Shown here: positions 9,241 through 46,860 of the stretch, in pieces
Position numbering within the stretch: the stretch's first letter is position 1
Layout: every line of letters starts with the position of its first letter
Assembly: GCF_030144855.1 (NCBI RefSeq)
Contig: NC_082718.1
Span: forward strand, 95,666,001 to 95,730,000
From: Hypanus sabinus
Lineage: Eukaryota
Reading direction: 5' to 3'
Length of the DNA stretch: 64,000 nucleotides
The notes under the pieces: generated by a model
What the model saw: the letters and a program-made list of their open reading frames with translations, nothing else
The model's database searches: none
Told to the model about the DNA's origin: nothing
Program-made: the position numbers and the translations under genes

Positions 9241-9320
9241 CTGGGTATTTTTTACAATCCATTGTGCGGAACTCCTGTCTGCCACAGTACATTTTCCTAC
9301 ATAAGCTCTATAGACTGGCA

Positions 9321-10958
9321 ACACACACAAAATGCTGGTGGAACACAGAAGGCCAGGCAGCATCTATAAGGAGAAGCACTGTCAACGTTTCGGGCTGAGA
9401 CCCTTCATCAGGTCTAACTGAAAGGAAAGATACTAAGAGATTTGAAAGTAGTGGGGAGAGGGGGTAATGCAAAATGATAGGAGATCTGGAGGGGGTGGGA
9501 TGAAGCTAAGAGCTGGAAAGGTGATTGGCGAAAGTGTTACAGAACTGGAGAAGGGAAAGGATCATGGGACGGGAGACCTCGGGAGAAAGAAGGGGGGGGT
9601 AGGGAATCACCAGAGGGAGATGGAGAACAGGAAAACAACTAAATATGTCAGGGATGGGGGCATTAACAGAAGTTAGAGAAGTCAATGTTCATGCCATCAG
9701 GTTGGAGGCTACCCAGCCGGTATATAAGGTGTTGTTCCTACAACCTGAGTTTGGATTCATTTTGACAGTAGAGGAGGCGATGGATAGACATATCAGAATG
9801 GGAATGGGACGTGGAATTAAAATGTGTGGCCACTGGGAGATCCTGCTTTCTCTGGCAGACCGAGCACAGGTGTTCAGCAAAACGGTCTCCCAGTCTGCGT
9901 CGGGTCTCACCAATATATAAAAGGCCACACCGGGAGCACCGGACGCAGTATACCACACCAGCCAACTCACAGGTGAAGTGTCGCCTCACCTGGAAGGACT
10001 GTCTGGGGCCCTGAATGGTGGTGAGGGAGGAAATGTAAGGGCAGGTGTAGCACTTGTTCCGCTTACAAGGATAAGTGCCAGGAGGGAGATCGGTTGGAAG
10101 GGATTTGGGGGACAAGTAGATGAGGGAATTGCGTAGGGAGTGATCCCTGTGGAAAGCAGAAAGGGGGGGGGGAAGGGAAAGATGTGCTTGGTAGTGGGAT
10201 CCCGTTGGAGGTGGCAGAAGTTGCGGAGAATTATACGTTGGACCTGGAGGCTGGTGGGGTGGTAGGTGAGAACAAGGGGAACCCTATCCCGAGTGGGGTG
10301 GCGGGCGGATGGGGTGAGGGCAGATGTGCGGGAAATGGGAGAGATGCGTTTGAGAGCAGAGTTGATGGTGGAAGAAGGGAAGCCCCTTTGTTTAAAAAAG
10401 GAAGACATCTCCTTAGTCCTGGAATGAAAAGCCTCATCCTGAGAGCAGATGCAGCAGAGACGGAGGAATTGTGAGAAGGGGATAGCATTTTTGCAAGAGA
10501 CAGGGTGGGATGAGGAATAGTCCAGGTAGCTGTGAGAGTCTGTAGGCTTATAGTAGATATCAGTAGACAGGCCGTCTCCAGAGATGGAGACAGAAAGATT
10601 AAGAAAGGGGAGAGAGGTGTCGGAAATGGACCAGGTAAATTTGAGGGCAGGGTGAAAGTTGGAGGCAAAGTTACTGAAGTCAATGAGCTCAGCATGCATG
10701 CAGGAAGCAGTGCCAATGTCGTCGATGTAGCAAAGGAGAAGAGTGGGACGGATACCTGTATAGACTTGGAACATGGACTGTTCCACAAAGCCAACAAAAA
10801 GGGAGGCATAACTGGGACCCATACGGGTGCCCATGGCTACACCCTTGGTTTGGAGGAAGTGGGAGGAGCCAAAGGAGAAATTATTGAGAGTAAGAACTAA
10901 TTCTGCTAGACGGAGGAGAGTGGTGGTAGAGGGGAATTGGTTAGGTCTGGAATCCAAA
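9321..10958 (-). mobile_element. 5'-truncated Penelope-like retroelement (RT C-terminal half, GIY-YIG endonuclease, 3' pseudo-LTR)
   Basis: ORF 9986-10975 has QTKGVAMGTRMGPSYA and YIDD. ORF 9738-10115 has GVVYCVRCSRCGLLYIGETRRRLGDRFAEH. Frameshifted. TSD cta(t/c)agactggca at 9308-9320 and 10962-10974. Confidence 0.92.
9379..9417 (-). ncRNA. Minimal hammerhead ribozyme motif in Penelope pseudo-LTR
   Basis: Minus strand reads CUGAUGA-AGGGUCUCAGCCC-GAAAC-GUU-GACAG. Core is intact and stem I is imperfect. Confidence 0.65.
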
Positions 10959-11286
10959 ACCCTACAGACTGGCATGTCTTATTTTCATTATAATTTATAA
11001 TTTCAAATGTTAGATAACTATAATGCAGTATTTACAGATTGAAAAAGAAACAAAATACATATGTCAAGATCACAAAAGGTTTAGCAGCAACCGCTAAAAT
11101 GCTAAATCTCCATCTACAATTGAATAAGTTTGGTTCTTATACACAAAGTGAATAATCTAATTCATTTTTACCATTTATAGCCATTCTAATTAATTGTAAT
11201 ATTAAGAAGTGACGTTAATCAAGCTTGACATCTTAAAACAAACAGTGTTTCCAACTATAATTATTTATTTCTTTCAATGCTCTTCC

Positions 11287-11825: not shown

Positions 11826-13911
11826 CAAAGGCAACTGTAGAGTACTATTGAAGAGTGCTACATGACAGGAAAGACCTTGGAGGTACTTACAAACAAGACT
11901 GAATGTCTTAAACTCAAGCTCAACGAAAATGTGAATTGGTGCAAGTTCAGACACGGGCAATAGCTTTAATTCGAATGGGCTGAGAAAATACATTGACTTA
12001 TTATTTAACCAACTTCAACTAATCCTGTAAAACACTGACTCAAAATTTCTTTTGTTTGGGAAACTAAAATTTTGCATTTCGCCACAGTTAATTTTGATGA
12101 GATGAAATGGGCTGATCGCAACAAACCAGCCAGTAGCAGTAAACCTAAAGATGAAAGCTAGGTGGCGCTGCAAGAAAAGACTACACCTCAGCATAGAACT
12201 AATAAAGCGAAGTCAAGTCATCAAATACACAGCAAAAACGGGTGACGGCATACATTTAAAGAACATTTATATGTATCTAAAAAGTGAGATCTGGGGACTG
12301 GATGAAATATACAGAAATTCAAAGGAGAATGTAAGATTTGCAAGAAAGAATACAAGTGTTTTTTTTTCTTTGAAGGACTACAAATTTCAACACAAAAGCT
12401 TTTCAGTTGTATTAAAAGAGAGAGGGGGATTAAGGGGTAGATAGACCTGTAAATACAGTGATAACGTTAAAAAAAATAAGGGCGTCTAAGCAATTATTTC
12501 CGTTCAAAGGGAAAATAGTAAAGAGGCTAGAAACCAGTTTCTGCACCCAGAAAGTGATAGGGAGACACAATAGGCAGAGTTGAGAAGTTGAGTCAATGCT
12601 TCAAGTCACAAAACTTTTCTTCATCTTCATAATCGGGGTGGGAAATCTACAGCATGCCTACAATAATGCAGAATTTCAGAGACAGGTATCCTTCGAGAGA
12701 AATAAAAGTGATAGAGTTGCAAACTTTGGCCAAGCAATTGTGAGCTTGAAGCTAAGTAAAGGAAAAGATGTAGTTAATTTTCTACTTTGTTAATTTGGGA
12801 TCTGTGCGTTTCTGCAAATCGCAGCTAACTTCTGGTGGTGGGATTCACTCCTTTAGTGTTTTTGGGTAGAGAGCCCGATGATGATGGAGAAGTGATTTGT
12901 TATCAAAAGGTGTGAAACATTTTTGGGGGGACCAGAATACACAGGTGCTCCCACATCCATTCTGCCCTTGCCCTGTTAGGTGGGTCTATTGTCTGAGCAT
13001 TCTGGATGACGGACAATACAGTGCCCACTGTGTAGTGGTGGCAGAGGGGATGCATATTTACTGCTGCGAGAGAGTGGTGTAAAGATTGGTCAATATATAA
13101 GAATCTTGATTTTAGTGGTACTGTAAACTGGACACGATGCTAATAAATGCAGTGGGTAAGACTGTTTCTTTCTTAATAGTGCAAGCACAGCAGTATTTAT
13201 CAGGTGTTTCCTGATTTTAGATTAAAGGTTTGAATTTATCGAATGAGCAAATAAGAATGGTGAGGTTATTCAATCATAAATGAGAAATACAATATAGGTA
13301 AGAGTTTAGATCTCATTTGATTTCTCTATTTAAGGATTTTTTAATTTACCTTGGAACTGCCCACAATGACACTCTGCCAGAAATTATTATTTTTGATCAA
13401 CTTTGCCAACTTTCCACCCTAACTTTTATACCACTAACTTCAACCAAACTGGTTTAGAGATCCATGTATTTATTCCCTCCATTGTTTTAAAGGGAGGCGT
13501 CTAATGATTTTGTCTGTGATGTTTTACCAAATGCCTGTCTTTAAGAAAGGCAAGTGGGTGAAAACAGGGACTCTCCAGAAGTATCTAGAACATTGTCCAT
13601 GTATCTGGTATCCCTTCTCAGCAAAGGGTCAGAAATCTGATGCCTGGGATGGCAGGTTTATTGTGAGAAGAGATTTGAACTAGGACTGTGCAAAGAGGTT
13701 TTGTCATTTGAAGAAGTATTTGACAACGTGGATGTTTTCTCAGGCCAGGCTGTCAAGAACGAGCAGTCCCAGTTTCAAAATAGGTTTAACTATTCCAATC
13801 CCTAAAAGGCAGTGGAACTTTAATGTAAGGGCTGTGGCAGCTCAGTAACCAGCGATATTGAAGAGAGAGACTAATGAATTTTTGGACATTACAGAAACAA
13901 GGAATACGGGG

Positions 13912-16847
13912 TGTAACGTTCTCCTTCGCGTGTCACGAACGCCGAATTTAACGTCGAGATAAACCACAGTTAATAAGAACCAGATCGCAGCAAGATTAAC
14001 CATTTACTGTTCACTCTTCACATTAACATATGGTGAAAACTGTTGATAAAACAATACAAGATTGATACAGTATTTGTTCCTTCCTTAATATCACATTTCA
14101 AGTGTAAATACTTGCAAAGGTGACTATAACTACATTACACTAAGGTGCAGTATACAGGGAGAGTTTACCTGCTCCATTGACTACTTTAAATACACTTCCA
14201 TGCAAACTATCCGCGACTCTTTAACTAACGAAAGCATAAACATTATCTACCGTCGTTACTTCTAACAGGATCGGAATAGCATCTTAGTTCAATATATCGA
14301 TTATCTATTAACTTACAGCGTTGCTCTCACTGTGATTTCTCATGCCTGCAAAACAACTTCTGCTCGGGTCTGCCTCGTGGTGAGCCCCCACCCTCGCGCT
14401 AATTTCAAACCGGTATTTTCCCACAAGACGCGGCGAAACCGGATGTGACGTCATTGCATGCCGATATATTTTACATGCAATGAATATACTTTAAACACTT
14501 CTAATTCTAACTAGAAAATAGTATCGAATGAATTACTAAGCGGAAATATTATAAACTAAATAACTGTCGTAAAGACAGCACACTCCCCGCTTGACCTTCG
14601 TAAGGTCACAATGAGCAGAGTACAAAACTTAGTCTCTTAATCAGTCATTGGGTAGAAGTAGAATAACTTCTGTAACTGGCCCTTGGTAAATTTTCACATC
14701 GCCTTGGTCGGTAGTCTTCAATTCGATCTTCCTGACATGTCCATCCCCGCTAGGGAATGTAGCAGTGATTCTGGCCATTGGCCAGCTGTTGCGGGCGATT
14801 TGCTTGTCCCTGAGCAGGACTAAGTCTTCAACTTGAAGATTCCTTCGGGGTTCTGTCCACTTTTGTCTCTGTTGCAACAAAGGTAGACATTTTTGTCTCC
14901 AGCGAGGCCAGAACTGATTTGCCAGAGCCTGGACTTGTCTCCATTGCTTTGTGTACAAATCCTTGTCTGAGAAGTCTCCTGGTGGAGGAGGTGCTCCTGC
15001 CTTCTGCGTAAAGAGCGTTGATGGCGAAAGTATAAAGGGGTTTTCTGGGTCAGAAGACACAGGTAGGAATGATTGTGCGTTTATAATGGCTGTGACCTCT
15101 GCCATTAGGGTGCACAGTACCTCGTGGGCCAATCGGGTGCGTTGCTGCATCTCAGGTTTCCTTTTCTGGGTTTTCCGTAAGGACGTGAACCGTTTGACTG
15201 CCTGCTCTTTGTTATCTGGTGAGCGCTGGCGTGGTTCTCTGAAAGGCAATGGGGCAACCCCATTATTTGCTTCATCTCTGAAGACCTTGGTGTCTTTGGG
15301 TTTTAAAGAAATGGTATCTTGAGCTGATTGTGCAAGTTTGTTTCCGTGCTCGGTTTGAACGAAAACTGACTGACCTAGCGTCTCGTCGGTTACTTTACGC
15401 TTGGTAATGTCTTGTTGTGCTTCTTTAGGGTACACCTCAGTGAGGCAGATCTTGGAACAAGAACGGCTTGACTGAGTTTGACTGCAAACTTCTGTACAGT
15501 TCGAGCTGACAATTGTTGTCCTGGAGTGAACCTCTCCCTCCCCGCCGTCCTGTTGTGGGGGTGAAGGAGCGTTGTCGGTTCTTTCATTCTTGACTTCATC
15601 ACGGAGCCGTGAGGGTAAATTTCCTTCCTCGTATGGATGTGATGCAATCGTGACTCTCTGAGGTTCCTCGTAGCTGGGGAAGTTATCGAATACGTATGGA
15701 GAGGGGAGACGAGCCTGCCTGTCTATTTGAGATTGTACATAGTCGCTTGTGCGTTCCAGTCTGGTCCTTTCTAAAGTAGATCTTGCTTCGGTCAGATCAC
15801 GCGACCCTTCAGCTTCTTCTATGTACTCTGCTTCCGCCATGGCAGCTTCTTCTTCTCTTTCTAGCTGCAGCACTTGCAACTCTGTCGATATTTTTGCCAT
15901 TTCCAATTGGGTTTCGGCTTCTCGGGCGGCCGCTTTCCTTTGTCTGGCAGCCTTTTCTTTCTGGATTTCGGCTTCTCTGATGGCCTGCAGCATTTTCAAA
16001 ACTGCTTCTTGTCTGGCGTAACGCAGTCGCACCTTGGCGGCTTCTGCCTTGGCTCTCGCCTGGGTGGACTTACTTGATGTCGGTTTACCGCCCTTGTCGC
16101 TGGGCGGCGTTGACTTGATGCTGGATCGAGCTGACATTGCAGCACTTGAAACACCTGATAATGTCGCTTTTTCACTGTAACGTTCTCCTTCGCGTGTCAC
16201 GAACGCCGAATTTAACGTCGAGATAAACCACAGTTAATAAGAACCAGATCGCAGCAAGATTAACCATTTACTGTTCACTCTTCACATTAACATATGGTGA
16301 AAACTGTTGATAAAACAATACAAGATTGATACAGTATTTGTTCCTTCCTTAATATCACATTTCAAGTGTAAATACTTGCAAAGGTGACTATAACTACATT
16401 ACACTAAGGTGCAGTATACAGGGAGAGTTTAGCTGCTCCATTGACTACTTTAAATACACTTCCATGCAAACTATCCGCGACTCTTTAACTAACGAAAGCA
16501 TAAACATTATCTACCATCGTTACTTCTAACAGGATCGGCATTAGCATCTTAGTTCAATATATCGATTATCTATTAACTTACAGCGTTGCTCTCACTGTGA
16601 TTTCTCATGCCTGCAAAACAACTTCTGCTCAGGTGTGCCTCGTGGTGAGCCCCCACCCTCGCGCTAATTTCAAACCGGTGTTTTCCCACAAGACGCGGCG
16701 AAACCGGATGTGACGTCATCGCATGCCGATATATTTTACATGCAATGAATATACTTTAAACACTTCTAATTCTAACTAGAAAATACTATCGAATGAATTA
16801 CTAAGCGGAAATATTATAAACTAAATAACTGTCGTAAAGACAGCACA
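13912..16847 (-). mobile_element. Young non-autonomous BEL/Pao LTR retrotransposon
   Basis: LTRs at 13912-14582 and 16176-16847 (TG...CA; about 9 differences counted by eye, roughly 98.7% identity). 5-bp TSD CGGGG at 13907-13911 and 16848-16852. PPT AGCGGGGAG abuts the left (3') LTR. Confidence 0.95.
14641..16137 (-). CDS. 498-aa internally deleted BEL/Pao polyprotein (gag coiled coil, linkers, integrase C-terminal/DUF5641-like region)
   Basis: Stop-free ORF from MSARSS. BEL motifs: AKAEAAKVRL, CTEVC...RSCSKICL..VYPK, VAPLPFR..RQR, LCTLMAEVTAIIN, QWRQVQALANQFW.RW, WPMARI..FPSGDGHVRK. No protease, RT, RNase H or integrase catalytic core. Confidence 0.85.
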   Translation of the reverse strand: MSARSSIKSTPPSDKGGKPTSSKSTQARAKAEAAKVRLRYARQEAVLKMLQAIREAEIQKEKAARQRKAAAREAETQLEMAKISTELQVLQLEREEEAAMAEAEYIEEAEGSRDLTEARSTLERTRLERTSDYVQSQIDRQARLPSPYVFDNFPSYEEPQRVTIASHPYEEGNLPSRLRDEVKNERTDNAPSPPQQDGGEGEVHSRTTIVSSNCTEVCSQTQSSRSCSKICLTEVYPKEAQQDITKRKVTDETLGQSVFVQTEHGNKLAQSAQDTISLKPKDTKVFRDEANNGVAPLPFREPRQRSPDNKEQAVKRFTSLRKTQKRKPEMQQRTRLAHEVLCTLMAEVTAIINAQSFLPVSSDPENPFILSPSTLFTQKAGAPPPPGDFSDKDLYTKQWRQVQALANQFWPRWRQKCLPLLQQRQKWTEPRRNLQVEDLVLLRDKQIARNSWPMARITATFPSGDGHVRKIELKTTDQGDVKIYQGPVTEVILLLPND

Positions 16848-17009
16848 CGGGGCTTGTGCAGGAAAATAGCACAGAGGTAAAAAAAAAGCTCAGCAATAAT
16901 TTTGTCCAAGTGCAGTGATGAATATTTTTTCTTCTGCCATCACATTATTTGGAGGCCTACAAAGAATCTTGAAATGGTTGAGAGATTTTACCATAGTGAT
17001 ACCGCCTAA

Positions 17010-17250: not shown

Positions 17251-17972
17251 TCAAAAGACCAGCTTCTATCCTGTTGGGAGCAACACGCACAAAATGCTGG
17301 TGGAACTCAGCAGGTCAGTACAGTTGATGTTTCAGGCCGAGACCCTTCATCAGGACACTGTTTGTCTATGCTGTCTGGCTTCATGATTCAAATTATAAGA
17401 CTTTAAAGTTACAAGGGTAGTTTCCAGCAAAAAAAAGGTTGAGGGATACTTGACAGGGGTATAAAATATGATAAATTTAAATTTTAAACAGACCAATAGA
17501 TTAGGGTAAATTTCATCTAAGAAACATACGAAGGATTCAAGAAATACAGCAAGTGTTGGTAATGACCTGTAAATTGCTAAATTGGATGCACCAATGATCA
17601 ATGCTGGCAAAAGGATATTAAATAAGCAACTGAAGGGAAAAAAATTGTGGGGCCACGGGGATAAAGCAGAGTACATGATTGATTGGATTTTCCTACTCAA
17701 GAGACAACATGGGTACAATGGTCTATTTTGTGTCGTCATGACATCGATTCAATAAATAAGATTGCATACAAACTGGATAACTCCCTAAACAACCAGCACA
17801 GGTTCATTAGGCCAAACTCTATTACTGTAGTTTGGACTTTCAATAGGATATAGTTAGTCTCACTTTTTTGATATTGCATTTCCCTATATTTATGATGCAT
17901 GTATTTCTAGAAGAGTCAGAGTTGGCGAATGGGCTGCGTTGACGCGTGAATGAAGTTACCAGAGAAAAGTAC

Positions 17973-18165
17973 AAACAAGAGAAAATCTGCAGATGCTGGA
18001 AATCCAAGCAACATCCGCAAAATGCTGGAGGAACTCAGCAGGCCAGGCAGCATCAATGGAGAAGAGTACAATCGACGTTTCCAGCAGAGACCCTTCATCA
18101 GGACTGGGAAAAAAAACAGATGAAGGGTCAGAGTAAGGAAGTGGGGGAGAGGGGGAAGGACCACA
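17973..18165 (-). mobile_element. Penelope pseudo-LTR fragment with hammerhead core (about 18069-18108), nested in the ERV 3' LTR
   Basis: Minus strand reads CAGUC-CUGAUGA-AGGGUCUCUGCUG-GAAAC-GUC-GAUUG. Confidence 0.75.
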
Positions 18166-18662: not shown

Positions 18663-21600
18663 ATACAAAGCAGCTTCTTTATTCGACAAAACAAAGCACC
18701 ATACGTAGACGCTTTCAGCCGCAAGGTCTGCTGGCCCAACGTGGGACTCCAAATTTTTATGTGCTAAACATCAAAAGCACAATTCCATATTTACAATGTA
18801 TCCGTAATGCTTTCTTTTAAACTACCAACAAACTTCACACTTCCCGACTCGCACGCACACCACAAATGAACATTGTCTGCTCGGAGGTTTTCAGCTTTTC
18901 GGAACCCATTGCTCAGAGCTGCTCCCCAAATTAAATCCACGATTCACATTCAGATATGAGGACTGGTGGCTAAAGTCGTCTGCTAAATGTAAATGCTTTA
19001 AACCCAAAATCGCTCTAACATAACCTCCTTTTAGCTGTCCTGGTCAAAAATATATTTGCACCAGAAAAGGCCAACATAAAGGAGGATCTACTCAAACAAG
19101 GCAGCAAAAATGCCCTGACTCGTAATTCCACCCACCCACAAGTATTTAAATGTGCACCTACATCTACCCTCTCCACAAAACTGCTAAGCAGAGAGATTGT
19201 TGCAGAAATTTGAAGAACAGTTTTTCGAAATGCGTCTTCGTTCGTGTGCCGGTTTGTCCCCCCCCCCCCCCCCCCCCCGCTGGCCGATTTCAGCTCAACC
19301 ACATTCCTTGTCCTCACCCCTTCATCCTCTAGTTGCTAAAACTCTCCCTTTCCGGGGCTCAGAGGCCTCTCAGGAAGGGGCTGGGGTGGTTTCTAATTGA
19401 ATGACTGCAAGGACTTCTCCCCAGTGGTACCCCCTTCCGAAATGTCCAGTCGATCGCTGGCCCGACTCACTTGCATTAACTGCCCACTCAGGCTGGGGGT
19501 GACTACCTTCAGGTGCCGTGCGCGATCTTTCCCAGTCTGCTATGCTATCGAAGTTGCGCAACCTGCTGTCTCAGCTTTAACTTAAAATCCATCCCCATCT
19601 TCTGCCTTCCCGTTTCCGGGGGGTGCGTTTTCATCAGCTGTGGTCGGCTAGTGTTCATCTCTTGGGATAGCATAAACCCCGGCCTTTCAGGCAGCACCTC
19701 ACCGTGACTTGGTCACCCGGCTGCGGGGGGACTGTCTCCTTTCCCTGCAGCTCTCTCTGATCAGCAATGTGCCGCTGTTGTTTTGCTGGGTCCTTCAACG
19801 CTTTAAGGTGGCTACAAAGGTCTTTCACATATTCTGTCCCCGTAAGCCCCAGGGAGTCGCGTTGCTCGCCCCCCCCCCCGTCAATAATTCGTAGCTGCTG
19901 AGACCCAGCGTGCAGTTTTGGGTTTGCTCGCAATCTCGTCAGCATTCCCGATAAATACCCCGACCCAGGTCTTTCCCGTCTCGATTACAGCACCGGCTAA
20001 AGCGTCCTTGATTGCTCTGTCCCTGAACTCGGAGGGTGGTAGGGTACGTGGAACCGTTGTCGGATCCCTAGCAGCCAGCATATTTCCCTCCCGACTTCCC
20101 CTGTGAACTCTGCTCCACCTGAACTGGGGTTCCCCTCCTTGGGAGGACTTCCTGAACTAGGATCCGTGTAGCGGTGCAGTCGCTGAAAGATCTCGGCCCG
20201 AAACATTGACTGTACTCTTTTCCATAGATGCTGCCTGGCCTGCTGAGTTCCTCCAGCATTTTGTCTGTGCTCCCTCTACAAACGTTTGTATTTCCATTTG
20301 GCGCTCGTGTGCCTGCCTCCCCCTCTGTTAGGATGGCGCTCGCGGGATTCGTTGCAGCGTCCCTAACTATCGTTACCGACTTGTCTATGGGGATGAGAAC
20401 TGCCTCCCCAGCTGCCCTTCTGCTGCCGGTGACTGTCCTCAGCCTCCCCGTATTCAGGAGCTTTACAACGGTGTGCAGTACGAGTTGTCCCATCGCACTG
20501 CCCACGGGGCGCAGTCTGAGGTCCTGCCGCAACGGGAGTCAGTTTCATTGAATAACGTGTCCCTGGCTTTGGGCCGCCGCTGCAGTATAGGTGAAAGGGG
20601 CGAGACGTGGCCCCATCCTAGCGCGGGTGCACAGACCAGGGCTTTCTTGATACCTGTAAAGGCCTTTTTCTCATTTGGCCCCAGCCTTACTTCCTCCAGA
20701 GGAGGCTTCCCTCCTTTAATCACTTCGTTGCGAGAACCCCGGTGTGAAACCACTGCCTTCCTCGCTCCCTTTGTGGGGCATGAAGCTGATTGCAGAACGC
20801 CTGTCATCTGACATGTCCTTCCTCATCCATCATCAGAAGCCATGAGTAATCATCTACATAGGGTCAGGTGGTCGACCACTTGACGTTCGATTAAACTTTC
20901 CAAAGTCTGCGCCATGACCTTGTTGGAAGTTGGCTGGGGGTATTGTGGAATCCCCGAGGGAGTCTGCTTCATGTGTACTGCCGCTCACCCAGGGTGAAGG
21001 CAAATCGGTCCTGGGACTCGGTCGGGGAGCCTCCAAAATCCATTAGCGATACCCAGGACTGAAAAACCATGTTCTGGAGACAGGCCATTCAGTATTGTCG
21101 CAAGGCTCACCACAATGGGATGCAATCTCGGGATGGTCTTATTAAGGGCGGTATAGTCTATATCATCGAAAACGTACACAACGCTGGAAGAACTCAGTCG
21201 GACAGGCAGCATCCGTGAGAAACGTTTCGGGCCGTTTCTATATCATCCATCGGCTTCTTTACTGGCTATATAGGCGAGTTGATAGTTGACGCAGTCTCTC
21301 CGAGTATCCCCAGGTGTTTTAGCTCCTTCACCATGCCCTGAACAGCTTTAACTGGGTATATCTTTATTCCACCACAATATCGCTTGTGTCTGGCCCACAC
21401 TGCTGGGAACTGCTGAAAAAGTAACCCATGAACACCATCTTAGCTCCAGCCTCTGATGACCGGGGCAGCTGCGACTATGCTAGCCAGGCTGTCTATTATA
21501 TTGTTTATACATGCTCGTGCCCCTGACTTATCCACGTTATTTCTCCCTCTCCCTAATCTACAACGGCCCCTGCTTCTCTTAGAATATCTATTCCAGGGAT

Positions 21601-23389
21601 AGTACCCCCCATTATTTGGATATGCCTGTTTCCCCTCCTACACCTGTAATATAAATAGCTTGTCTGGTTGTTGGCAAGGGTAGGACAGTTATCGAATGCC
21701 CCGATATATTGCATTGCCGGCCCCCTAACAATGTTGTATACATTCGCGGGTTACCAGCGCTGGCAGTGGGGGCTGCCGCCAGCTATTTTGCTGTCTTCAC
21801 CAGCACTAAGATCTGATCAGCAGAGAGATTGGACAGACTGGGCACTGATGGGATTACAGTGACTTTCGCCTCCTTTTAGGGCACTGCCTCCAACCATGTC
21901 TCGGTAGGCCACAGCTGTAGCATGTCAATTCCTTTACCCTCCCTTGTCTATTCCTTGCTACGTGACCCGGGTGCCGGCACACAAAACAAACCCTGAGACG
22001 TCACAATGGGGGCACCCGCTATAGCCACTAGAATTTCCCTTTTCACTTTCTTTCGCTTACCTGTCTGGCTCATAAAACTATCAGAGTAGGTCGACCCAAC
22101 TGCTATTCCCAAATCTAAAACCCTGGTGGGCTGAGCTCCAGCATTTTCAAGGAGACTGGGTCATCCCTCCCTAGATCTAACGCTGAATGCTCCTCATACA
22201 CTCTATATTTACATTCTGCATAATCGGTGGCTGTCTCATTCGCTCTTTGAATCAGTGCCATTATCACTCCCCAGTTACTCTCACCTCCCCCACAGTCGCT
22301 GTCTCACTGCCCCTTTTAAAGAGTGATATCCTTCTTCATTGCTGGCATTCCCAGTAGTTGCCCATGTACTTTCCTGCAGCCCCTGGTGTCCCACATATTC
22401 CTTGGGCATGTCGCTTTTACCAACATGTGTATATCTTTGAAGTCCAACCATTTCCTTGAGCTTGCACCAGACTTCTGAATTCCCACATACAACTTTAAGT
22501 GAGGACAACTCTGACAGAAGGCACTCTTTCTCCCAGGGGGTGACGGGGTCATGACTGTTTGTGATCAGGGTCAAGACTCCGATCATCAGGGTTTTCAACC
22601 TGGCGTTGCCTGATCTCAATAGGTGCCATCCTGGCCATATATCTGTGTAAAATCTCTCCCCAAAATATCTCCACACTAAGCAAAATAAAAATGATGGGTA
22701 CCAGTTAAACATGCTAAAACTGCAGAAAATGTACTCTGCAATCCACCACTTTTGAGCATCTAGCTGATGATGCCTGCTGCATTCCTTTGCATCAAACTCG
22801 CAAAACACGTACAGCTCCCCAAACGAGCATACACACTGGCGTCCCAAACCTCGGTAGCCACCCTCCTCAACTGGTGGCTCCATCTCACCAGATTAACACA
22901 CAAAGTTTCGTCTCTTACGTAAACACACATGTACGCAAACACACACAAACACGACTTTTGTACCTACCAATTCAACCCTCCGTGTTACCCTGTACCGCCA
23001 ACCCAAACAGACCCAAATGAGAGTGTTAATTTTAAAAAATGTCACCCACTTAGACTGCTGAAATCACTGGCCACACAATGGGTCGCAGAAAGGTATCCCA
23101 CTGCTGACACCAAATGTCACGTGAGTGAAGTCGCCGCAAAAAAAGCACTGGTAGAAACAAAGCAGTTTCTTTATTCGACAAAAGAAGGTATAGCAGGCAT
23201 CATACGTAGACGCTTTCAGTCAAAAGGTCTGCTGGCCCAACATGGGGCTTGAAATTTTATGTGCTAAACATCAAAATAATTCCATATTTACAATGCTTTC
23301 TTTGAAACTACACACAAACTTCACACCTCCCAGTTCTAGCATGCACCACAGACATCCAAATGAATTTTAATCTGCATAGTCTGGTCTGA

Positions 23390-28000: not shown

Positions 28001-29984
28001 CTAACCTCACCATCAAACCCGCAGATAATGGGGTTGCTGCAGTAGTCTGGTGGACTGATCTCCACCCAGCTGAAGCCAGGAAACAACACTCAAGACACCT
28101 GCACTTAATTAACCCTCAAACAGGACCCCACTAAGGGGCACCTGGCCATTGTCTCCCACACCATCAGCGACCTTATCAACTCTGGGGATCTCCTATCCAC
28201 TGTCACCAACCTCATAGTTCCCTTACCCTGCAGCTCCCTTTTCTACCTCCTATCCAAGATCCATAAACCTGCCTGTCCAGGTAGACCCATTGTTTATTTG
28301 TTCCTGCCCCACCGAACTTGTATCTGTACACCTCAACTCTGTTATACCGCCCCAGTTCAGTCCCTTCCTACAAGCATCCATGATGCTTCACATGCTGTCA
28401 ATCTTTTCAATGACTTCAAGTTCCCTGGCCCCAGTCATATCATTTTCACTATGGATGCCCAGTCCCCATAACCTCTATCCCCCATTAGGAGGGCCTTAAA
28501 GCTCTCTGCTTCTTTCTGGACAACAGACCCAACCAATCCCAATTCCCTTCCACCACCACCCTCCTCCATCTGACGGAACTGGTCCTCACTCTCAGTAATT
28601 TCTCCTTCAGATCCTCCCACTTCCTCAAGACCAACGGTGTTGCCACGGGCACTTGTGTGGATCCCAGCTATCCCTGCCTTTTTGTCAGCTACGTGAGACA
28701 GTCCATGTTTGAAACCTACACCAGTATCACCCCCCAACTCTTCCAATACTACATCAACGACCAGCATTGGTGCTGCTTCCTGCACCCATGCCGAATTCAT
28801 CGACTTCAACTTTACCGCCAACTTCCAACCTGCCCTCAAATTTACTTGGTCCATTTCCGACACCTTCTCTCGCCCCTTTCTCTATCTCTGTAGACAGTCT
28901 ATCTAATGATAACTTTTATGAACCCACTGATTCTCACAGCTCCCTGGACTATATCCCTTTCCAACTGGTCACTTGCAAAAATGTGATCCACATTTCTAAG
29001 TTCCTCCACCTGCACCGCATCTGCTCTCAGGATAAAGCTTTTCATTCCAGAACTAATGGGATGACCTCCCCCTTGGGATTCTGCCACCAAGCACATCATT
29101 CCCTCCCCCGCCCCCACTTTCTGCAGGGATCTCGTCCATTCATCCTTCCCCAGTGACCTCCCTCCTGGTGCTTATCCTTGCAAGCAGAACAAGCATTACA
29201 CCTGTCCCTTCATCTCCTCCTCACGACCAGTCAGCGCCCCAAACAGTCCTTCCGGGTGAGGCGACACTTCACCCGTGAGCCTGTTGGGGTCATCTGCCAT
29301 ATCCGATGCTACTGGTGTGGCCTCCTGTATATCGGTAAGACCTGACGCAGATTGGAAGACTGCTTCGCCGAGCACCTACATAACATATGCCAGAAGAAAG
29401 CATGATTTCCCTGCAGCCACCGATCTTAATTCTATTTCCCAATGCCATTCTGACATGCCAGTCTAAGGGCTCCTCTACTGCCACTATGAGGCCACACTCA
29501 GGTTGGAGCAGCAATATCTTAGATTCCATCTGGGTAGCCTCAACCTGATGGCATGAACATAGATTTCTCAAACATCTGGTAACTACTCCCCCTCACCATT
29601 CCCCCATCCCTGCTTCCCTCTCACTTTTTCTCCTTACCTGCCCATCACCTCCATCTGGTGCTCCTCTGCCTTCTGTCTCTTCCATGGTCTTCTACCCTCT
29701 ATTAGATTCCCCCTCTTCCAGCCTCTTACCTCTTTCACCAATCAACTTTCCAGCTCTTTACTTCATTTCTCCTCCCCTCCTGGTTTCACCTATCACTTGC
29801 CGCTGTGTATGACTACTTCCCTTCCTCCCCACCTTCTTACTCTCACTTCTCCCCTTCCTTTCCAGTCCTGAAGAAGGGTCTCAGCCCAAAATATTGTCTG
29901 TCTACTCTTTTCCATTACGCTGCCTGGCCTGCATTTGTGCACGTTGATTTGGATTTCCAGCATCTGCAAATCTTCTCCTGTTTG
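28001..29984 (+). mobile_element. Degenerate Penelope-like element in BRI3BP intron 2, inserted into an L2 3' end
   Basis: Same family as 9321-10958 (IKPADNG, RT and GIY-YIG remnants, pseudo-LTR). The L2 tail at about 27700-28000 resumes at about 29985. Confidence 0.85.
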
Positions 29985-32310: not shown

Positions 32311-32769
32311 TCATGCCCAACTCTCCATCCTCTATTCTACCAGGCAACTTCCTCTTTATATCTACAGCTGTGCGAACCAACCATTGCACTGAGCAGGAAA
32401 TTTTTACATGGTCTAAAGACTGCGCAGCACTTTAAATTTTTTTCTGTAACATGCACATCAAACAAACACAAGTAAACAAAGTCAGGTAGTCAAAACAGCT
32501 GACAGGCAGAATGGCAAAAATAAAACGTTTTGACTAGATGGCGTTGGCAATCAGCAGGCCGGCGGTTTAGTAATAATAAGCTACTTACTTCTATTCTGTG
32601 TTGTTACAATTTGGATATTTTCAATTAGTAATTGGTAATTTCAAAATTATATTTACATAATGTAAGAGAAAATTCCAGACGCACAGCAACAACAGCTATG
32701 TGTGTGGGAACATTTCAGTTACTGTGTGGCTGTGTACCCATGCAGCTTAGAGGAAACAGTGCTACTAGA

Positions 32770-33670
32770 TCCTCATTTCCCTATCCCACCCTCATCTGCA
32801 CTTCCACACTTCCTCTCTCGCTCCCTCTGATCCTCGCTCACTCACTCTTCCTTCTCACCTCCCACTCTCATTGCCAACAGCTCCCTTTTTGCCTACTTTC
32901 TCAATTTCATTTCCTTCTCCCACCCTCATGCTCACGTCCTCTGTCCGCTTCCCCGATCCTCCCCCACCCTTCCTCATCCCTACTGCCCCTCTACTTATTA
33001 CCTCATCCCTTGCCTTCCCTCCTTGTCACAACCCTCCCTCATCTCATCCCCTGCCCTCTAACTCAACTTCTTCCCGTCTCAATCCCTGCCACTACCCCCT
33101 TCCCCTGCTCCCACACCCTCTCATCCTCCTCGCTACAGCCACTCCAGACCCCTCATCCCATTTCTGCTCTTCCCTACCTTCTCTTGCATCCCCTCCTTCT
33201 TCTCCCCCTCACTCACCTTCCCCTCATCCTACTCATTCTTCCCATTCCCTCACTCAACCCCCACTCCTCTGACCATACCCTTTTACCCCTTACCTATCCT
33301 ACCCTCAGCTTTCCCTTCTTACCCCACTCCTACACCCCTTTACCCGTCGTCCCATTCGTACCCCTTTGCTTCTTGCCTCATCCTAACCTCTCCTTCTGCT
33401 CAACCCATTCCCCTCTTGCCCCACTCCCACCCCCTCCTCCCACTCTTGCCCCTCCCCCCACCCGCCCTACTCCAACCCCTCCACCCACTCCAACCCTTCC
33501 ACCCTCTTGTCCCATTGCAACCCCTCCTGCCTTATTCCAACCCCCTCCATGCCGTCTTGACCCATCCTACCCCTACATACCCCGCTAGCTCCAGTCACAC
33601 TCCCTCTTCCCTACTCCACCTCCACCTCTTCGTTCCCTCTCCTCTCTTCCCGCCCCACCTCCTGCGCAAC
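32770..33670 (-). repeat. Low-complexity polypurine/polypyrimidine tract at the start of BRI3BP intron 1 (second tract at about 31120-31425)
   Basis: About 900 bp of mostly C/T on the plus strand, i.e. G/A-rich on the BRI3BP sense strand. Confidence 0.9.
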
Positions 33671-44529: not shown

Positions 44530-46860
44530 TTGAATTGAGTTGAATTGACTTTATTACATCCTTCACATACATGAGGAGTAAAAATCTTTATATTACCTCT
44601 CCGTCTAAATGTGCAATGTGCAATCATAGTAATTTTTTTGTCTTTCTAAATCTTTTTATTATTATTAGTAATATGGACAGAATACAAATGATATATTGAT
44701 AAAGAAATTACCAACATACAAATTCCATTATATACGAAAAAAAACATACATAATAGTTACAATATAAATGAGTTTACCAAGACGTAAGCCATAAAATATA
44801 TGTATGAACATGGTAAATCTAAATATTTCATAATATATGATATAAAGAAAACAGAAAAAAGAAAGAAAAAAAATAAAAATATATATATATTATGCAAAAC
44901 TAGCTAATCTACTAATCTAATAACTAATAACTAATATAGAAGAAAAAAGAAACAAAAAAAAAAGAAGGGAGAGAAAAAAAAGGGGGCTGTTTATAATATC
45001 TCACAAAAATAAGTATTCATCAATGCCGTCACTTCCGGTCCTCTCAACATACATAAGCTAAAAGCTGGGAAATCAAATGAACTTGGCACAGGGTCATATT
45101 ACATCATATGAAAATGTTGAATAAATGGTCTCCATAACTTTTCAAATTTAATAGGTCTCAAAAGTACCACTTGTAATTTTTTCTAAATTTAAACATAACA
45201 TAGTTTGAGGGAACCAATTAAATACAGTGGGAGGATCAATTTCTTTCCAATTCAACAATATAGATCTTCTAGCCATCAGAGTTAGAAATGCAATCATTCG
45301 ACGGGCAGAAGAAGATAAATGCAGTGAGTCTAACATTGGTAAACCAAAAATTGCGGTAATAGGATGAGGTTGTAAATCGATATTCAAAACCGCAGAAATA
45401 ATATCAAAAATATGTTTCCAATATTTCTCCAAAAATGAACAAGACCAAAACATATGAGTTAAAGACGCAATTTCAGATTGACATCTGTCACAAACAGAAC
45501 TAATATGAGAGTAAAAATGAGCTAATTTATCCTTAACTTAGGTAAAATAACCATCTTAATAGCATTAATCCTACCTATTAGGGATAAAGATAAAGATTTT
45601 TTCCAAGTTACTGGCATCTAGATTGGAGAAGGTATTACCCAAAATTATTTCAGATGATCAAACCAGTTTTATTAAAAATTGTTATTCTTTTTTTAACATT
45701 AGGAGATTGTTGAATATTGTTTATACTCCCTCACATGACACTTCAGAATGCGTGATTTCATTAGATACGGAGAAAGCACTTGATAGAGTTGAATGGCCTT
45801 ACTTATTTAATGTGTTGGAGAAGTTTAATTTTAGTCTGATATTTATATCATGGATTAAATTGATTTATCGTACTCCAGTAGCCTCAGTGTTTACCAATAA
45901 TCAAAGATCTCCCTTTTTTCGCCTATTTCGGGGCACTAGACAAGGATGTCCTCTTAGTCCATTACTATTTAACATTGCCTTAGAACCTTTGGCAATTGCC
46001 ATCAGACAATCACAGGATATTTTGGGTATTAATCGTGGGACAGATATTCATAAGTTATCTTTGTATGTAGATGATTTATTACTATTCATTTCTAACCCGG
46101 AGAAATCCATCCCAGCAGTTTTATCATTATTGGCTCAATTTAGTGAGTTTTCTGGGTATAAGTTAAATCTTAATAAAAGTGAATTGTTTCCTTTGAATAA
46201 ACGGGTCCCAATTTATGGAAATTTACCTTTTAAATTAGTTAATGATTCTTTTACTTATTTAGGGATCAAAATCACAAAAAAAACAACAAAGATTTATTTA
46301 GATTTAATTTTTTACCCTTAATTGATCAGATTAAAGGTTTGTTTACTAATCATAGTAATTTATAGTAATTCACAACAAATAGAACAGTCAATGTAACATA
46401 GAAATACACTCAAATCCGCGTGAGTTAATCAGTCTGATGGCCTGGTGAAGAAGCTGTCCCGGAGCCTGTTGGTCCTGGCTTTAATGCTGCGGTACCATTT
46501 CCCCGATGGTAGCAGCTGGAATAGATTGTGGTTGGGGTGACTTGGGTCCCTAATGACTCTTCAGGCCCTTTTCTCGCACCTGTCTTTGTAAATGTCCTGA
46601 ATAGTGGGAAGTTTACATCTAGAGATGCGCTGGGCTGTCCGCACCACTCTCTGCAGAGTCCTGCGATTGAGGGAATCACAGTTTCCGTATGAGGCAGTGA
46701 TGTAGCCAGTCAGGATGCTCTCAATTGTGCCCCTGTAGAAAGTTCTTAGAATTTGGGGGCCCATACCAAACTTCCTCAACTGTCTGTGGTGAAAAAGATG
46801 CTGTTATGCCTTTTTCACCACACAGCTGGTGTGTACAGACCACGTGAGGTCCTGGTGATG
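44530..46860 (-). mobile_element. L2-type LINE 3' end, split by an L1 insertion
   Basis: TTGAA-repeat tail at 44530. ORF LRKFGMGPQILRTFYRGTIESIL at 46561-46779. Sequence is continuous across the L1 TSD. Confidence 0.8.
44636..46347 (-). mobile_element. L1-clade LINE, 5'-truncated with inverted 5' segment
   Basis: Minus part carries the ORF2 CCHC end (CDRC...THMFWSC) and an A-rich tail. Plus part (45598-46347) carries RT (GTRQGCPLSPLLF, LYVDD). Perfect 14-bp TSD aatcatagtaattt at 44622-44635 and 46348-46361. Confidence 0.9.

What the first reader, a model, noticed from the sequence alone, without database searches (positions are those of the whole stretch)
13912..16847. Miniature BEL/Pao element that lost every enzyme but kept one continuous 498-aa ORF
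Seen: near-identical LTRs and a perfect TSD, indicating recent mobilisation, around a 1.6-kb interior that is almost entirely one stop-free ORF. From knowledge of BEL polyproteins, the ORF stitches together four non-adjacent pieces: the gag N-terminal coiled coil, the post-knuckle CTEVC/RSCSKICL linker, the pre-RT VAPLPFR linker and the integrase C-terminus. The joins fall near 15573, 15423 and 15141, so three large deletions (capsid and knuckles; protease; RT, RNase H and integrase core) are all in frame. Several normally conserved residues look substituted (e.g. GVAPLPF for WVAPLPF, NAQSF for NSRPL). Inference: the frame rather than the protein may be under selection (NMD escape or translation-coupled packaging of a parasitic RNA). 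Alternatively, the product is a Gag-integrase-tail mini-protein that helps or restricts the autonomous partner.
Basis: partly seen in the sequence, partly recalled or inferred. Interest (0 to 1): 0.72.

Follow-up and report, generated by a model that had tools for sequence, protein, structure and literature searches.

The report
Stripped-down stingray BEL/Pao retrotransposon, ORF intact
This is one copy of an abundant, young, non-autonomous BEL/Pao retrotransposon of the Atlantic stingray that lost all its enzymes through three in-frame deletions but still encodes a 498-residue leftover protein; I could not show whether that reading frame is kept by selection or by chance.

Summary
A 2,936-nt LTR element lies on the minus strand. 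Its LTRs are 671 and 672 nt and differ by 8 substitutions and 1 indel, and it has a 5-bp target duplication. The 1,593-nt interior is 94% one 498-codon ORF.

The ORF is colinear with four separate stretches of full-length BEL/Pao polyproteins. Each sits on a short in-phase microhomology (xDN, K, QQ).

The copy is not unique. The window is Hypanus sabinus, where about 150 annotated proteins belong to this family. Every intermediate deletion stage is also found.

Residues inherited from pol are no longer constrained:
- 11 of 61 normally invariant sites are changed, against 0 of 61 in an autonomous-type copy from the same genome.
- Family variants ignore site conservation.
- A lineage lacking the C-terminal barrel has still spread.

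Selection on the frame is only suggested. Three in-frame joins have a chance probability of about 0.05, and the family is young enough for many ORFs to be open by chance.

The closest precedent is the mouse IAP I-delta-1 element. I rate this a new variant of a known kind, of moderate interest.

The parts
13907..13911 (.). Target-site duplication CGGGG (left copy)
   Evidence: Identical 5-mer directly outside both LTRs.
13912..14582 (-). 3' LTR in element sense (671 nt)
   Evidence: 98.7% identical to 16176-16847, with TG..CA ends. Contains the CRE-like TGACGTCA at 14445-14452.
14583..14592 (-). Polypurine tract AAGCGGGGAG abutting the 3' LTR
   Evidence: Read from the sequence. Its role as plus-strand primer is inferred from position.
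14641..16137 (-). 498-codon ORF plus stop (stop at 14641-14643); 94% of the interior
   Evidence: The exact protein is in the public collection as a Hypanus sabinus RefSeq product (P0396).
15580..16137 (-). Piece 1 (q1-186): Gag N-terminal arm; predicted long helices q22-110 and q116-142
   Evidence: 80% identical to the N-terminus of the parent-type Gag P0086, which continues into a DUF1759 capsid. AlphaFold2 pLDDT is about 90 for q30-100.
15571..15579 (-). Join J1 microhomology, codons T187-D188-N189 (ACC GAC AAC)
   Evidence: In parent P0086 the left side reads NERADN|RYF and the right side PQTDN|APSPP. The deletion is about 368 aa (capsid plus zinc knuckles).
15424..15570 (-). Piece 2 (q190-238): post-knuckle linker with CTEVC...RSCSKICL, ending VYPK
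   Evidence: 73-75% identical to P0086 607-655 and to P0121/P0134. Matches the same position in P0277, P0322 and P0139.
15421..15426 (-). Join J2, codons K238|E239 (AAA GAA)
   Evidence: Nine sister proteins carry exactly 191 extra residues here (VYPK|GAKDKAIKAYVILDDQSNRSL...PCIK|EAQQ), the protease segment.
15148..15420 (-). Piece 3 (q240-330): pre-RT linker with GVAPLPFREPRQR
   Evidence: 71% identical to P0304 137-239, directly upstream of its RT. 6 of 18 normally invariant sites are changed.
15142..15147 (-). Join J3 microhomology, codons Q331-Q332 (CAG CAA)
   Evidence: In P0304 the left side reads PEMQQ|QYIAFM and the right side FLQQ|RTRLTHEV. The deletion is about 869 aa (RT, RNase H region, integrase core).
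14644..15141 (-). Piece 4 (q333-498): integrase C-terminal region. DUF5641 (PF18701) covers q397-492, i.e. window 14662-14949
   Evidence: Pfam E = 2e-25. 89% identical and gap-free against P0304 1105-1273. The domain model has pLDDT 90.7: a helix plus a five-strand SH3-like barrel.
16138..16175 (-). 38-nt leader between 5' LTR and ATG (primer-binding region expected here)
   Evidence: Read from the sequence. No TGG-type PBS is recognisable.
16176..16847 (-). 5' LTR in element sense (672 nt)
   Evidence: TGACGTCA at 16711-16718.
16848..16852 (.). Target-site duplication CGGGG (right copy)

Best explanation
**What it is.** This is one copy of a high-copy, non-autonomous BEL/Pao (Belpaoviridae-type) LTR retrotransposon family of the Atlantic stingray Hypanus sabinus.

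**How it arose.** The family formed stepwise from a roughly 1,930-aa Gag-PR-RT-RH-IN element by three internal deletions, each joined at a short in-phase microhomology. This is the signature of reverse-transcriptase template switching.
1. J3 removed RT through the integrase core (about 869 aa).
2. J1 removed the capsid and zinc knuckles (about 368 aa).
3. J2 removed the protease segment (191 aa).

**How it moves.** The element keeps its LTRs, leader and polypurine tract. It must be copied by proteins from autonomous relatives present in the same genome.

**What it encodes.** The ORF encodes an N-terminal Gag coiled coil, a long disordered linker and the integrase C-terminal SH3-like barrel (DUF5641).

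**Why the ORF persists.** My reading is that translation of the element's own RNA through most of its length helps that RNA to be propagated. Possible routes are RNA stability with a short 3' UTR, or cis delivery of the nascent Gag arm with its RNA into the helper's particles, as shown for mouse IAP I-delta-1. The pol-derived residues, including the barrel, are not needed.

**Status of each step.**
- Shown: anatomy, mosaic origin, joins, family size, intermediates, and relaxed residue constraint.
- Inferred: template switching, trans-mobilisation, and any benefit from translation.
For: **Structure.** LTRs, TSD, PPT and ORF are as described.

**Four colinear matches to full polyproteins.**
- P0131 carries DUF1759, PF05380, rve and DUF5641.
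- P0277 (1,927 aa) and P0322 also match in four stretches.

**Helper-type proteins in the same genome.**
- P0304 carries RVT_1, PF05380, rve and DUF5641. Its piece 4 is 89% identical to the window ORF, and it violates 0 of 61 invariant sites.
- P0086 is a Gag with DUF1759.

**Microhomology at all three joins**. Template switching at microsimilarity is documented for LTR elements, including a Pao element (PMC5131818).

**Nested series in Hypanus.**
- J3 only: P0077/78.
- J1+J3 with the 191-aa protease segment: 9 clusters.
- J1+J2+J3: 71 clusters among P0001-81.

**Family size.** About 150 distinct annotated proteins in about 84 clusters, on many chromosomes.

**Relaxed residue constraint.**
- 11 of 61 invariant sites are changed in the family, against 0 of 61 in P0304 (Fisher p = 6e-4).
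- Singleton and shared variants are spread evenly over conservation classes (Spearman p = 0.80 and 0.15).

**The barrel is dispensable.** A 53-nt frameshifting deletion after q434 is shared by at least 13 proteins on different chromosomes.

**Hints of an ORF-level effect.**
- All three joins are in frame, while the in-phase share of repeated 6-9-mers is only 0.30-0.43, so three in a row is about 0.05.
- There is no stop or indel in pieces 3-4 despite 45 residue differences from P0304. At this CDS's nonsense/missense ratio of 0.066-0.071, 30-45 missense changes predict 2-3 nonsense mutations.
- The three disabling events that have spread all lie at or after q413.

**Precedent.** The IAP I-delta-1 in-frame gag-pol fusion acts in cis (PMC6466679).
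Against: - The family is young: median 96% pairwise identity over q131-498 and 1.2% LTR divergence. A large share of copies would still be open with no selection at all.
- The ratio of disabling to missense events is about 8:129 among singletons and 3:103 among shared variants. The difference is not significant.
- Only annotated proteins of 274-871 aa were visible. Broken or early-truncated copies and out-of-frame deletion derivatives are therefore under-sampled.
- The finding was picked because it is an ORF (look-elsewhere effect).
- No intact full-length autonomous copy was shown. Gag-type and pol-type proteins come from different loci.
- No tRNA-type PBS was recognised.
- No expression or translation data were available.
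Confidence: 0.5

Rival explanations
1. Neutral by-product. The element is an ordinary deletion derivative, mobilised in trans only through its cis signals. The three joins happen to be in frame. The ORF is open in many copies only because the burst is recent, and translation plays no role.
For: - Median 96% pairwise identity and low LTR divergence.
- Variants are uniform with respect to site conservation.
- Invariant residues are lost.
- Frameshifted and nonsense lineages have spread: W413stop in 2 clusters and the 53-nt deletion in at least 13 proteins.
- There is no significant deficit of shared disabling events.
Against: - Three in-frame joins in a row have a probability of about 0.05.
- Every intermediate stage is also open to the natural stop.
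- The pre-burst lineage changed 9-11 of 61 invariant sites and about 45 residues in pieces 3-4 without one stop or indel.
- The disabling events that spread all lie in the last 17% of the ORF.
- Independent in-frame fusions of the same two regions exist in Xenopus and pipefishes, though these were found through a protein search that can only see in-frame cases.
Confidence: 0.35
2. Functional mini-protein. The coiled-coil arm and the integrase C-terminal barrel together form a working protein. It either helps the element (an adaptor that replaces the lost nucleocapsid) or restricts the autonomous partner, as Ty1 p22 or Fv1 do.
For: - The two predicted folded modules are the better preserved parts. 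0 of 8 invariant sites are changed in piece 1.
- Piece 4 has 3 of 43 near-fixed changes, against 6 of 18 in the linker piece 3 (Fisher p = 0.015).
- The barrel models confidently (pLDDT 90.7).
- The same two ends are retained independently in frog and pipefish derivatives.
Against: - A lineage whose ORF ends before the barrel has spread to many chromosomes.
- R486, 100% conserved in 143 polyproteins, is G in 58% of family members, including this copy. R355 and P356 are replaced in 98%.
- DUF5641 carries as many shared variants per site as the linkers.
- Fold matches are only generic SH3-like barrels (E >= 0.02).
Confidence: 0.1
3. Sub-hypothesis on origin, not exclusive of the others. J2 is not a one-off deletion. 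It is the repeated removal of the protease segment as an intron from RNA of the protease-retaining form, so that mini copies are 'processed' copies spawned again and again.
For: - The 191-aa segment is always missing with the same boundaries.
- Its presence or absence needs at least 5 changes on the family tree, at least 3 of them forced by strongly supported branches.
- It shows all four combinations with the 53-nt deletion.
- The join reads AAA|GAA. AAAG is present on both sides and a pyrimidine-rich PCPSVPC stretch lies upstream of the acceptor side.
Against: - Recombination between co-packaged RNAs explains the same pattern, and nearest neighbours differ between the left and right arms.
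- A canonical GT donor requires the Gly codon after VYPK to be GGT, which is unknown.
- AAG is a poor acceptor.
- J1 and J3 cannot be canonical introns given the window's codons (and inference).
Confidence: 0.25
4. A domesticated host gene, as the RefSeq names (plectin-like, intersectin-like) might suggest.
For: It is annotated as a protein-coding gene.
Against: It is flanked by LTRs and a TSD, with about 150 dispersed paralogues and no residue-level constraint.
Confidence: 0.01

Closest known systems
Mouse IAP I-delta-1 (class II endogenous retrovirus, deleted subtype)
   Same: It is a non-autonomous LTR element made by an internal in-frame deletion that fuses gag to pol. It needs Gag and Pol in trans, outnumbers its full-length parent among new insertions, and its fusion protein acts in cis (PMC6466679, citing Saito et al. 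2008).
   Different: It belongs to a different superfamily. It has one 1.9-kb deletion rather than three. The IAP fusion keeps much of gag, whereas here the capsid, nucleocapsid knuckles and protease are all gone and only the integrase tail of pol remains. No functional data exist for the stingray element.
Gag-only or ORF-retaining non-autonomous LTR retrotransposons of plants (e.g. BARE2, Zeon) and HAL1 'half-L1' (from my own knowledge, not checked here)
   Same: They are parasitic derivatives that keep a structural-protein ORF while losing the enzymes, and they are mobilised by an autonomous partner.
   Different: Those keep a recognisable capsid or ORF1. This one keeps only the Gag N-terminal coiled coil fused to an integrase C-terminal domain.
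TRIM / LARD non-coding non-autonomous LTR elements
   Same: LTR-bounded, enzyme-less, trans-mobilised.
   Different: They have no ORF, whereas here 94% of the interior is ORF.
Template-switch chimeras made by LTR retrotransposons, including the Pao element BATUMI (PMC5131818)
   Same: Junctions lie at short microsimilarity, attributed to RT switching templates inside particles.
   Different: Those join element RNA to host mRNA. Here the switches are within the element itself.
Gag-derived restriction factors (Ty1 p22, Fv1; from my own knowledge)
   Same: A truncated Gag-type product from a retroelement that could interfere with particle assembly.
   Different: There is no evidence of restriction here. 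The family is itself highly mobile and its residues are unconstrained.

Membership tests
LTR retrotransposon (structural definition) | Two direct LTRs with TG..CA ends, flanked by a short target-site duplication | tested here: met
   671/672-nt LTRs at 98.7% identity; 5-bp CGGGG TSD.
LTR retrotransposon (structural definition) | Polypurine tract next to the 3' LTR and a tRNA-complementary primer-binding site next to the 5' LTR | tested here: inconclusive
   The PPT AAGCGGGGAG is present. The 38-nt leader has no TGG-type PBS, and no tRNA set of the host was available.
BEL/Pao superfamily (Belpaoviridae) | Coding sequence homologous and colinear to BEL/Pao Gag-PR-RT-RH-IN polyproteins, including the family-typical DUF5641 integrase tail | tested here: met
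   DUF5641 E = 2e-25. Four colinear matches to polyproteins carrying DUF1759, PF05380, rve and DUF5641.
BEL/Pao superfamily (Belpaoviridae) | Placement by reverse-transcriptase phylogeny | not testable with these tools
   The element has no RT. Its nearest pol-bearing relative P0304 has RVT_1 plus PF05380, but no RT tree was built.
Non-autonomous in-frame deletion derivative (IAP I-delta-1 type) | Lacks the enzymes but keeps the cis signals, and derives from an autonomous element by internal deletion | tested here: met
   No PR, RT, RNase H or integrase core. Breakpoints were mapped on parent-type proteins, and intermediates were found.
Non-autonomous in-frame deletion derivative (IAP I-delta-1 type) | The deletion is in frame and yields a Gag-Pol fusion ORF ending at the natural pol stop | tested here: met
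   A 498-aa ORF from the Gag start to the end of DUF5641, with the stop 58 nt before the 3' LTR.
Non-autonomous in-frame deletion derivative (IAP I-delta-1 type) | Mobilised by partner proteins in trans, with its own fusion protein acting in cis | not testable with these tools
   Only indirect evidence: helper-type Gag and pol proteins exist in the same genome. The bench test is referred.
TRIM / LARD | No coding capacity in the interior | tested here: not met
   94% of the interior is one ORF.
Domesticated retroelement gene | Single or few copies, no LTRs, purifying selection on residues | tested here: not met
   LTRs plus TSD, about 150 paralogues, and variants blind to site conservation.

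The most novel reading that the evidence does not exclude
The ORF is kept as a translated spacer: selection acts on an uninterrupted reading frame (ribosome transit to near the natural stop, giving RNA stability or cis delivery of the RNA with the nascent Gag arm) but not on most of the encoded residues. This solution has arisen repeatedly in BEL/Pao elements of rays, frogs and pipefishes, always fusing the pre-RT linker to the integrase tail.
Probability: 0.3. Interest if true: 0.65.

Novelty: new variant of a known kind. Interest (0 to 1): 0.42.

Why it matters
**The open question.** Whether non-autonomous LTR elements benefit from being translated is settled experimentally for only one mammalian case, IAP I-delta-1.

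**Why this family is useful.** It offers a natural series in a single genome, which could make the question testable by comparative genomics alone once DNA of all copies is compared:
- three nested in-frame deletions;
- all intermediate stages;
- a barrel-less offshoot;
- hundreds of dated copies.

**Practical point.** About 150 RefSeq 'genes' of Hypanus sabinus, named plectin-like, intersectin-like and so on, are ORFs of this transposon and should not be counted as host genes.

Tried and rejected
1. **Fetching DNA of sister copies and of the parent.** No dN/dS, no LTR dating of other copies, no nucleotide-level breakpoints and no splice-site check were therefore possible. The other DNA collections hold viruses, metagenomes and prokaryotes, so I did not use them.
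2. **Using 'many intact ORFs' as proof of selection.** Rejected. Pairwise identity is 96%, so a fifth or more of the copies would be open by chance.
3. **Letting 'codon-phased microhomology' explain the in-frame joins.** Only 30-43% of repeated 6-9-mers in this CDS are in phase.
4. **Relative-rate tests on piece 4.** The result was 16 against 5 unique changes versus P0089 (p about 0.02), but not significant versus P0085 or P0091. I treat this as weak.
5. **A first mini/autonomous split by regular expression.** It was wrong and was redone.
6. **Canonical GT-AG introns for J1 and J3.** Not compatible with the window's codons (inference).
7. **Fold search for a specific integrase C-terminal domain match.** Only generic SH3-like barrels came back (Tudor, PWWP, KOW, chromo) at E >= 0.02.
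8. **Literature searches.** Searches for non-autonomous BEL/Pao elements and for DUF5641 found nothing on this architecture.
9. **Sequence-handling rules.** The consensus lines that the alignment tools print on their own were not used.
Full report
**1. Observation**

The element lies on the minus strand.
- The two LTRs (13912-14582 and 16176-16847) differ by 8 substitutions and one single-base indel in 672 columns. Three of the substitutions are CpG transitions.
- The LTRs begin with TG and end with CA. They are flanked by a perfect 5-bp duplication, CGGGG.
- In element sense the interior is 1,593 nt: a 38-nt leader, a 1,497-nt ORF including the stop (14641-16137, 498 codons from the first ATG) and 58 nt that end in the purine tract AAGCGGGGAG next to the 3' LTR.
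- Pfam recognises only DUF5641, the BEL/Pao integrase tail (E = 2e-25).
- The window has no N and nothing that I take for human.

**2. Where it comes from**

- The word search returned about 84 clusters, with about 150 member sequences, of Hypanus sabinus RefSeq proteins. They are 487-637 aa long and cover the whole query.
- The exact 498-aa protein of the window is itself in the collection, on a 111.9-Mb H. sabinus contig. The window is therefore Atlantic stingray, and the copy is far from unique.
- The RefSeq names (plectin-like, intersectin-1-like, caldesmon-like) reflect the coiled coil only.

**3. The mosaic**

The exhaustive profile search was justified because the family scans left 330 residues unexplained and the word search cannot see long polyproteins. 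It found 11,166 relatives. Full-length BEL/Pao polyproteins match the ORF in four separate colinear stretches:
- the Gag N-terminus, before the DUF1759 capsid;
- a stretch after the knuckles;
- a stretch just before RT;
- the last roughly 166 residues.

Parent-type proteins from the same genome give the joins to the residue.

| Join | Window reads | Parent, left side | Parent, right side | Removed |
|---|---|---|---|---|
| J1 | NER-TDN-APSPP | NERADN\|RYF | PQTDN\|APSPP | about 368 aa |
| J2 | VYPK\|EAQQ | VYPK\|GAKDKAIKAYVILDDQSNRSL | PCIK\|EAQQ | exactly 191 aa |
| J3 | PEMQQ\|RTRL | PEMQQ\|QYIAFM | FLQQ\|RTRLTHEV | about 869 aa |

- The sum, 498 + 1,428 = 1,926 aa, equals the length of a complete relative (P0277, 1,927 aa).
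- Each join sits on an in-phase microhomology of one to three codons. This is what RT template switching produces. It is documented for LTR elements, including a Pao element (PMC5131818).

**4. Intermediates and relatives**

- Hypanus also holds J3-only forms that still have the knuckles and protease (P0077/78). It holds nine clusters with J1+J3 that keep the 191-aa protease segment.
- Hemitrygon akajei has 1,047-1,069-aa proteins with a complete Gag, the protease and the same J3 join (P0121/P0269).
- All J3-bearing forms of both rays share G in place of the otherwise invariant W of WVAPLPF.
- On a tree of piece 4, however, the Hemitrygon J3 forms sit with a Hemitrygon autonomous-type integrase. 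So either the lineage is old and recombines with autonomous elements, or J3 recurs.
- Xenopus laevis (P0139) and pipefishes (P0161/P0271) have independent deletions with other breakpoints that also fuse the pre-RT linker in frame to DUF5641. These were found through proteins, so out-of-frame cases would not have been seen.
- An autonomous-type pol exists in H. sabinus: P0304, with RVT_1, PF05380, rve and DUF5641. It is 89% identical in piece 4. A Gag with capsid also exists (P0086). They lie at different loci, and an intact complete helper was not shown.

**5. Is the protein constrained?**

Across 143 polyproteins of at least 1,200 aa, 70 sites of the ORF are at least 90% conserved.
- The family's prevailing residue differs at 6 of 18 such sites in piece 3 and at 5 of 43 in piece 4. 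In piece 4, R355Q, P356S and L357F are nearly fixed, while G437E and R486G are at about 55%.
- It differs at none of the 9 such sites in pieces 1-2.
- P0304 violates 0 of 61 (Fisher p = 6e-4).
- Among 99 mini proteins plus the window, variants seen once and variants shared by several copies are spread evenly over conservation classes. Shared variants run at 0.33, 0.15, 0.29 and 0.31 per site from most to least conserved (Spearman p = 0.15; earlier version).
- A 53-nt frameshifting deletion after q434 removes the whole barrel. It is shared by at least 13 proteins on different chromosomes, in both mini and protease-retaining forms.

So the pol-derived residues, including the DUF5641 barrel, are not needed for spread. 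Piece 4 is nevertheless less eroded than the linker piece 3 (3/43 against 6/18 near-fixed changes, p = 0.015).

**6. Is the frame constrained?**

This cannot be settled with proteins alone.

Evidence against any claim of frame selection:
- Pairwise identity over q131-498 has a median of 96% and LTR divergence is 1.2%. A sizeable share of copies would still be open by chance.
- Truncated copies are present in the annotated set.
- Disabling events number about 8 against 129 missense among singleton variants, and 3 against 103 among shared ones. The difference is not significant.

Evidence for frame selection:
- Three in-frame joins. The in-phase share of repeated 6-9-mers in this CDS is 0.30-0.43, so three in a row is about 0.05.
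- There is no stop and no indel in 272 codons of pieces 3-4, although about 45 residues differ from P0304. The nonsense/missense ratio of this CDS is 0.066-0.071, so 30-45 missense changes predict 2-3 nonsense mutations, giving P(0) of 0.05-0.13.
- The three disabling events that have spread all lie at or after q413.

Each hint is weak and subject to ascertainment. Only proteins of 274-871 aa were visible, and the finding was chosen because it is an ORF.

**7. The protease join**

Presence or absence of the 191-aa segment, always with the same boundaries, needs at least five changes on the family tree, three of them forced by strongly supported branches. It also shows all four combinations with the 53-nt deletion. 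Two explanations remain:
- Recombination between co-packaged RNAs. Nearest neighbours differ between the two arms.
- Repeated removal of the segment as an intron. The join reads AAA|GAA. A canonical donor would require GGT as the next codon in protease-retaining DNA, which I could not read.

**8. The product**

- AlphaFold2 predicts a long helix at q22-110 (pLDDT about 90) and a second at q116-142. It predicts disorder from about q145 to q390, then a C-terminal helix plus five-strand barrel (whole model pLDDT 56; domain alone 90.7).
- Foldseek finds only generic SH3-like barrels (Tudor, PWWP, KOW, chromo) at E >= 0.02.

**9. Verdict**

This is a non-autonomous BEL/Pao deletion derivative, one of a large young family.
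- The idea that residues are free is supported.
- The idea that the frame is under selection remains an open and testable possibility. I put it at about 0.5, against 0.35 for a neutral by-product and 0.1 for a protein that needs both ends.
- The closest precedent is the mouse IAP I-delta-1 element, whose in-frame gag-pol fusion acts in cis (PMC6466679).

One bench step is referred.

Noticed in passing
window 14641-16137 and sister proteins P0001-P0084, P0396-P0424: About 150 RefSeq gene models of Hypanus sabinus (named plectin-like, intersectin-1-like, caldesmon-like, GRB10-interacting GYF protein 2-like, or uncharacterized) are ORFs of this transposon family.
   Followed up: partly
window 15712-16137 (N-terminal arm) versus sister proteins: The coiled-coil arm is hypervariable in length, with 47 different arm lengths among 100 mini proteins. 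Many copies carry a 35-aa tandem duplication of the start that includes a few leader codons. The rest of the ORF (q131-498) is gap-free in 55 aligned proteins.
   Followed up: partly
sister proteins P0060-62, 66, 68, 69, 71, 72, 74, P0405, 406, 408, 419; corresponds to window about 14783-14835: A 53-nt out-of-frame deletion after q434 (new tail ANGQNHCYIP) is shared by at least 13 proteins on different chromosomes and removes the DUF5641 barrel. A W413 stop is shared by two clusters.
   Followed up: yes
proteins P0139 (Xenopus laevis), P0161/P0271 (Nerophis, Entelurus), P0174 (unnamed Logan assembly): These are independent in-frame deletions of RT through the integrase core, with other breakpoints. 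They again fuse the pre-RT linker to DUF5641.
   Followed up: partly
proteins P0322 (Patiria miniata), P0092-P0113 (teleosts): A starfish polyprotein is 61% identical to the stingray integrase tail, and teleost proteins are 64-76% identical. This spread is unusually flat for such distant hosts. Horizontal transfer of this BEL/Pao clade was not examined.
   Followed up: no
window 16711-16718 and 14445-14452: A palindromic CRE-like TGACGTCA lies in each LTR. The LTR CpG observed/expected ratio is 1.3. No AATAAA or TATAAA was found in the LTR in element sense.
   Followed up: no
window 16138-16175: The 38-nt leader after the 5' LTR has no TGG-type primer-binding site. ARAGORN finds no tRNA gene in the window.
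   Followed up: partly
window 45623-46321 (+), 50338-51333 (-), 60333-60950 (-): Other retroelement ORFs: RVT_1 (E = 3e-28), a gag-type aspartyl protease (E = 2e-7) and zf-RVT (E = 6e-6). ORFs at 9986-10975, 22281-22883 and 32632-33588 have no Pfam match.
   Followed up: partly
window 9868-10940 versus 28539-29377; 9297-9415, 17972-18105, 20184-20274, 48275-48401: There is an inverted pair of about 1-kb repeats at 76-78% identity, and a 90-130-nt interspersed repeat in at least four copies at 75-88% identity, probably a SINE-like element.
   Followed up: no
protein motif in P0086, P0121, P0134, P0277, P0322, P0139: The protease segment of this BEL/Pao clade carries a conserved (V/I)LDDQSNRSL motif rather than a D-S/T-G motif. 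It is intact in the protease-retaining non-autonomous forms.
   Followed up: no
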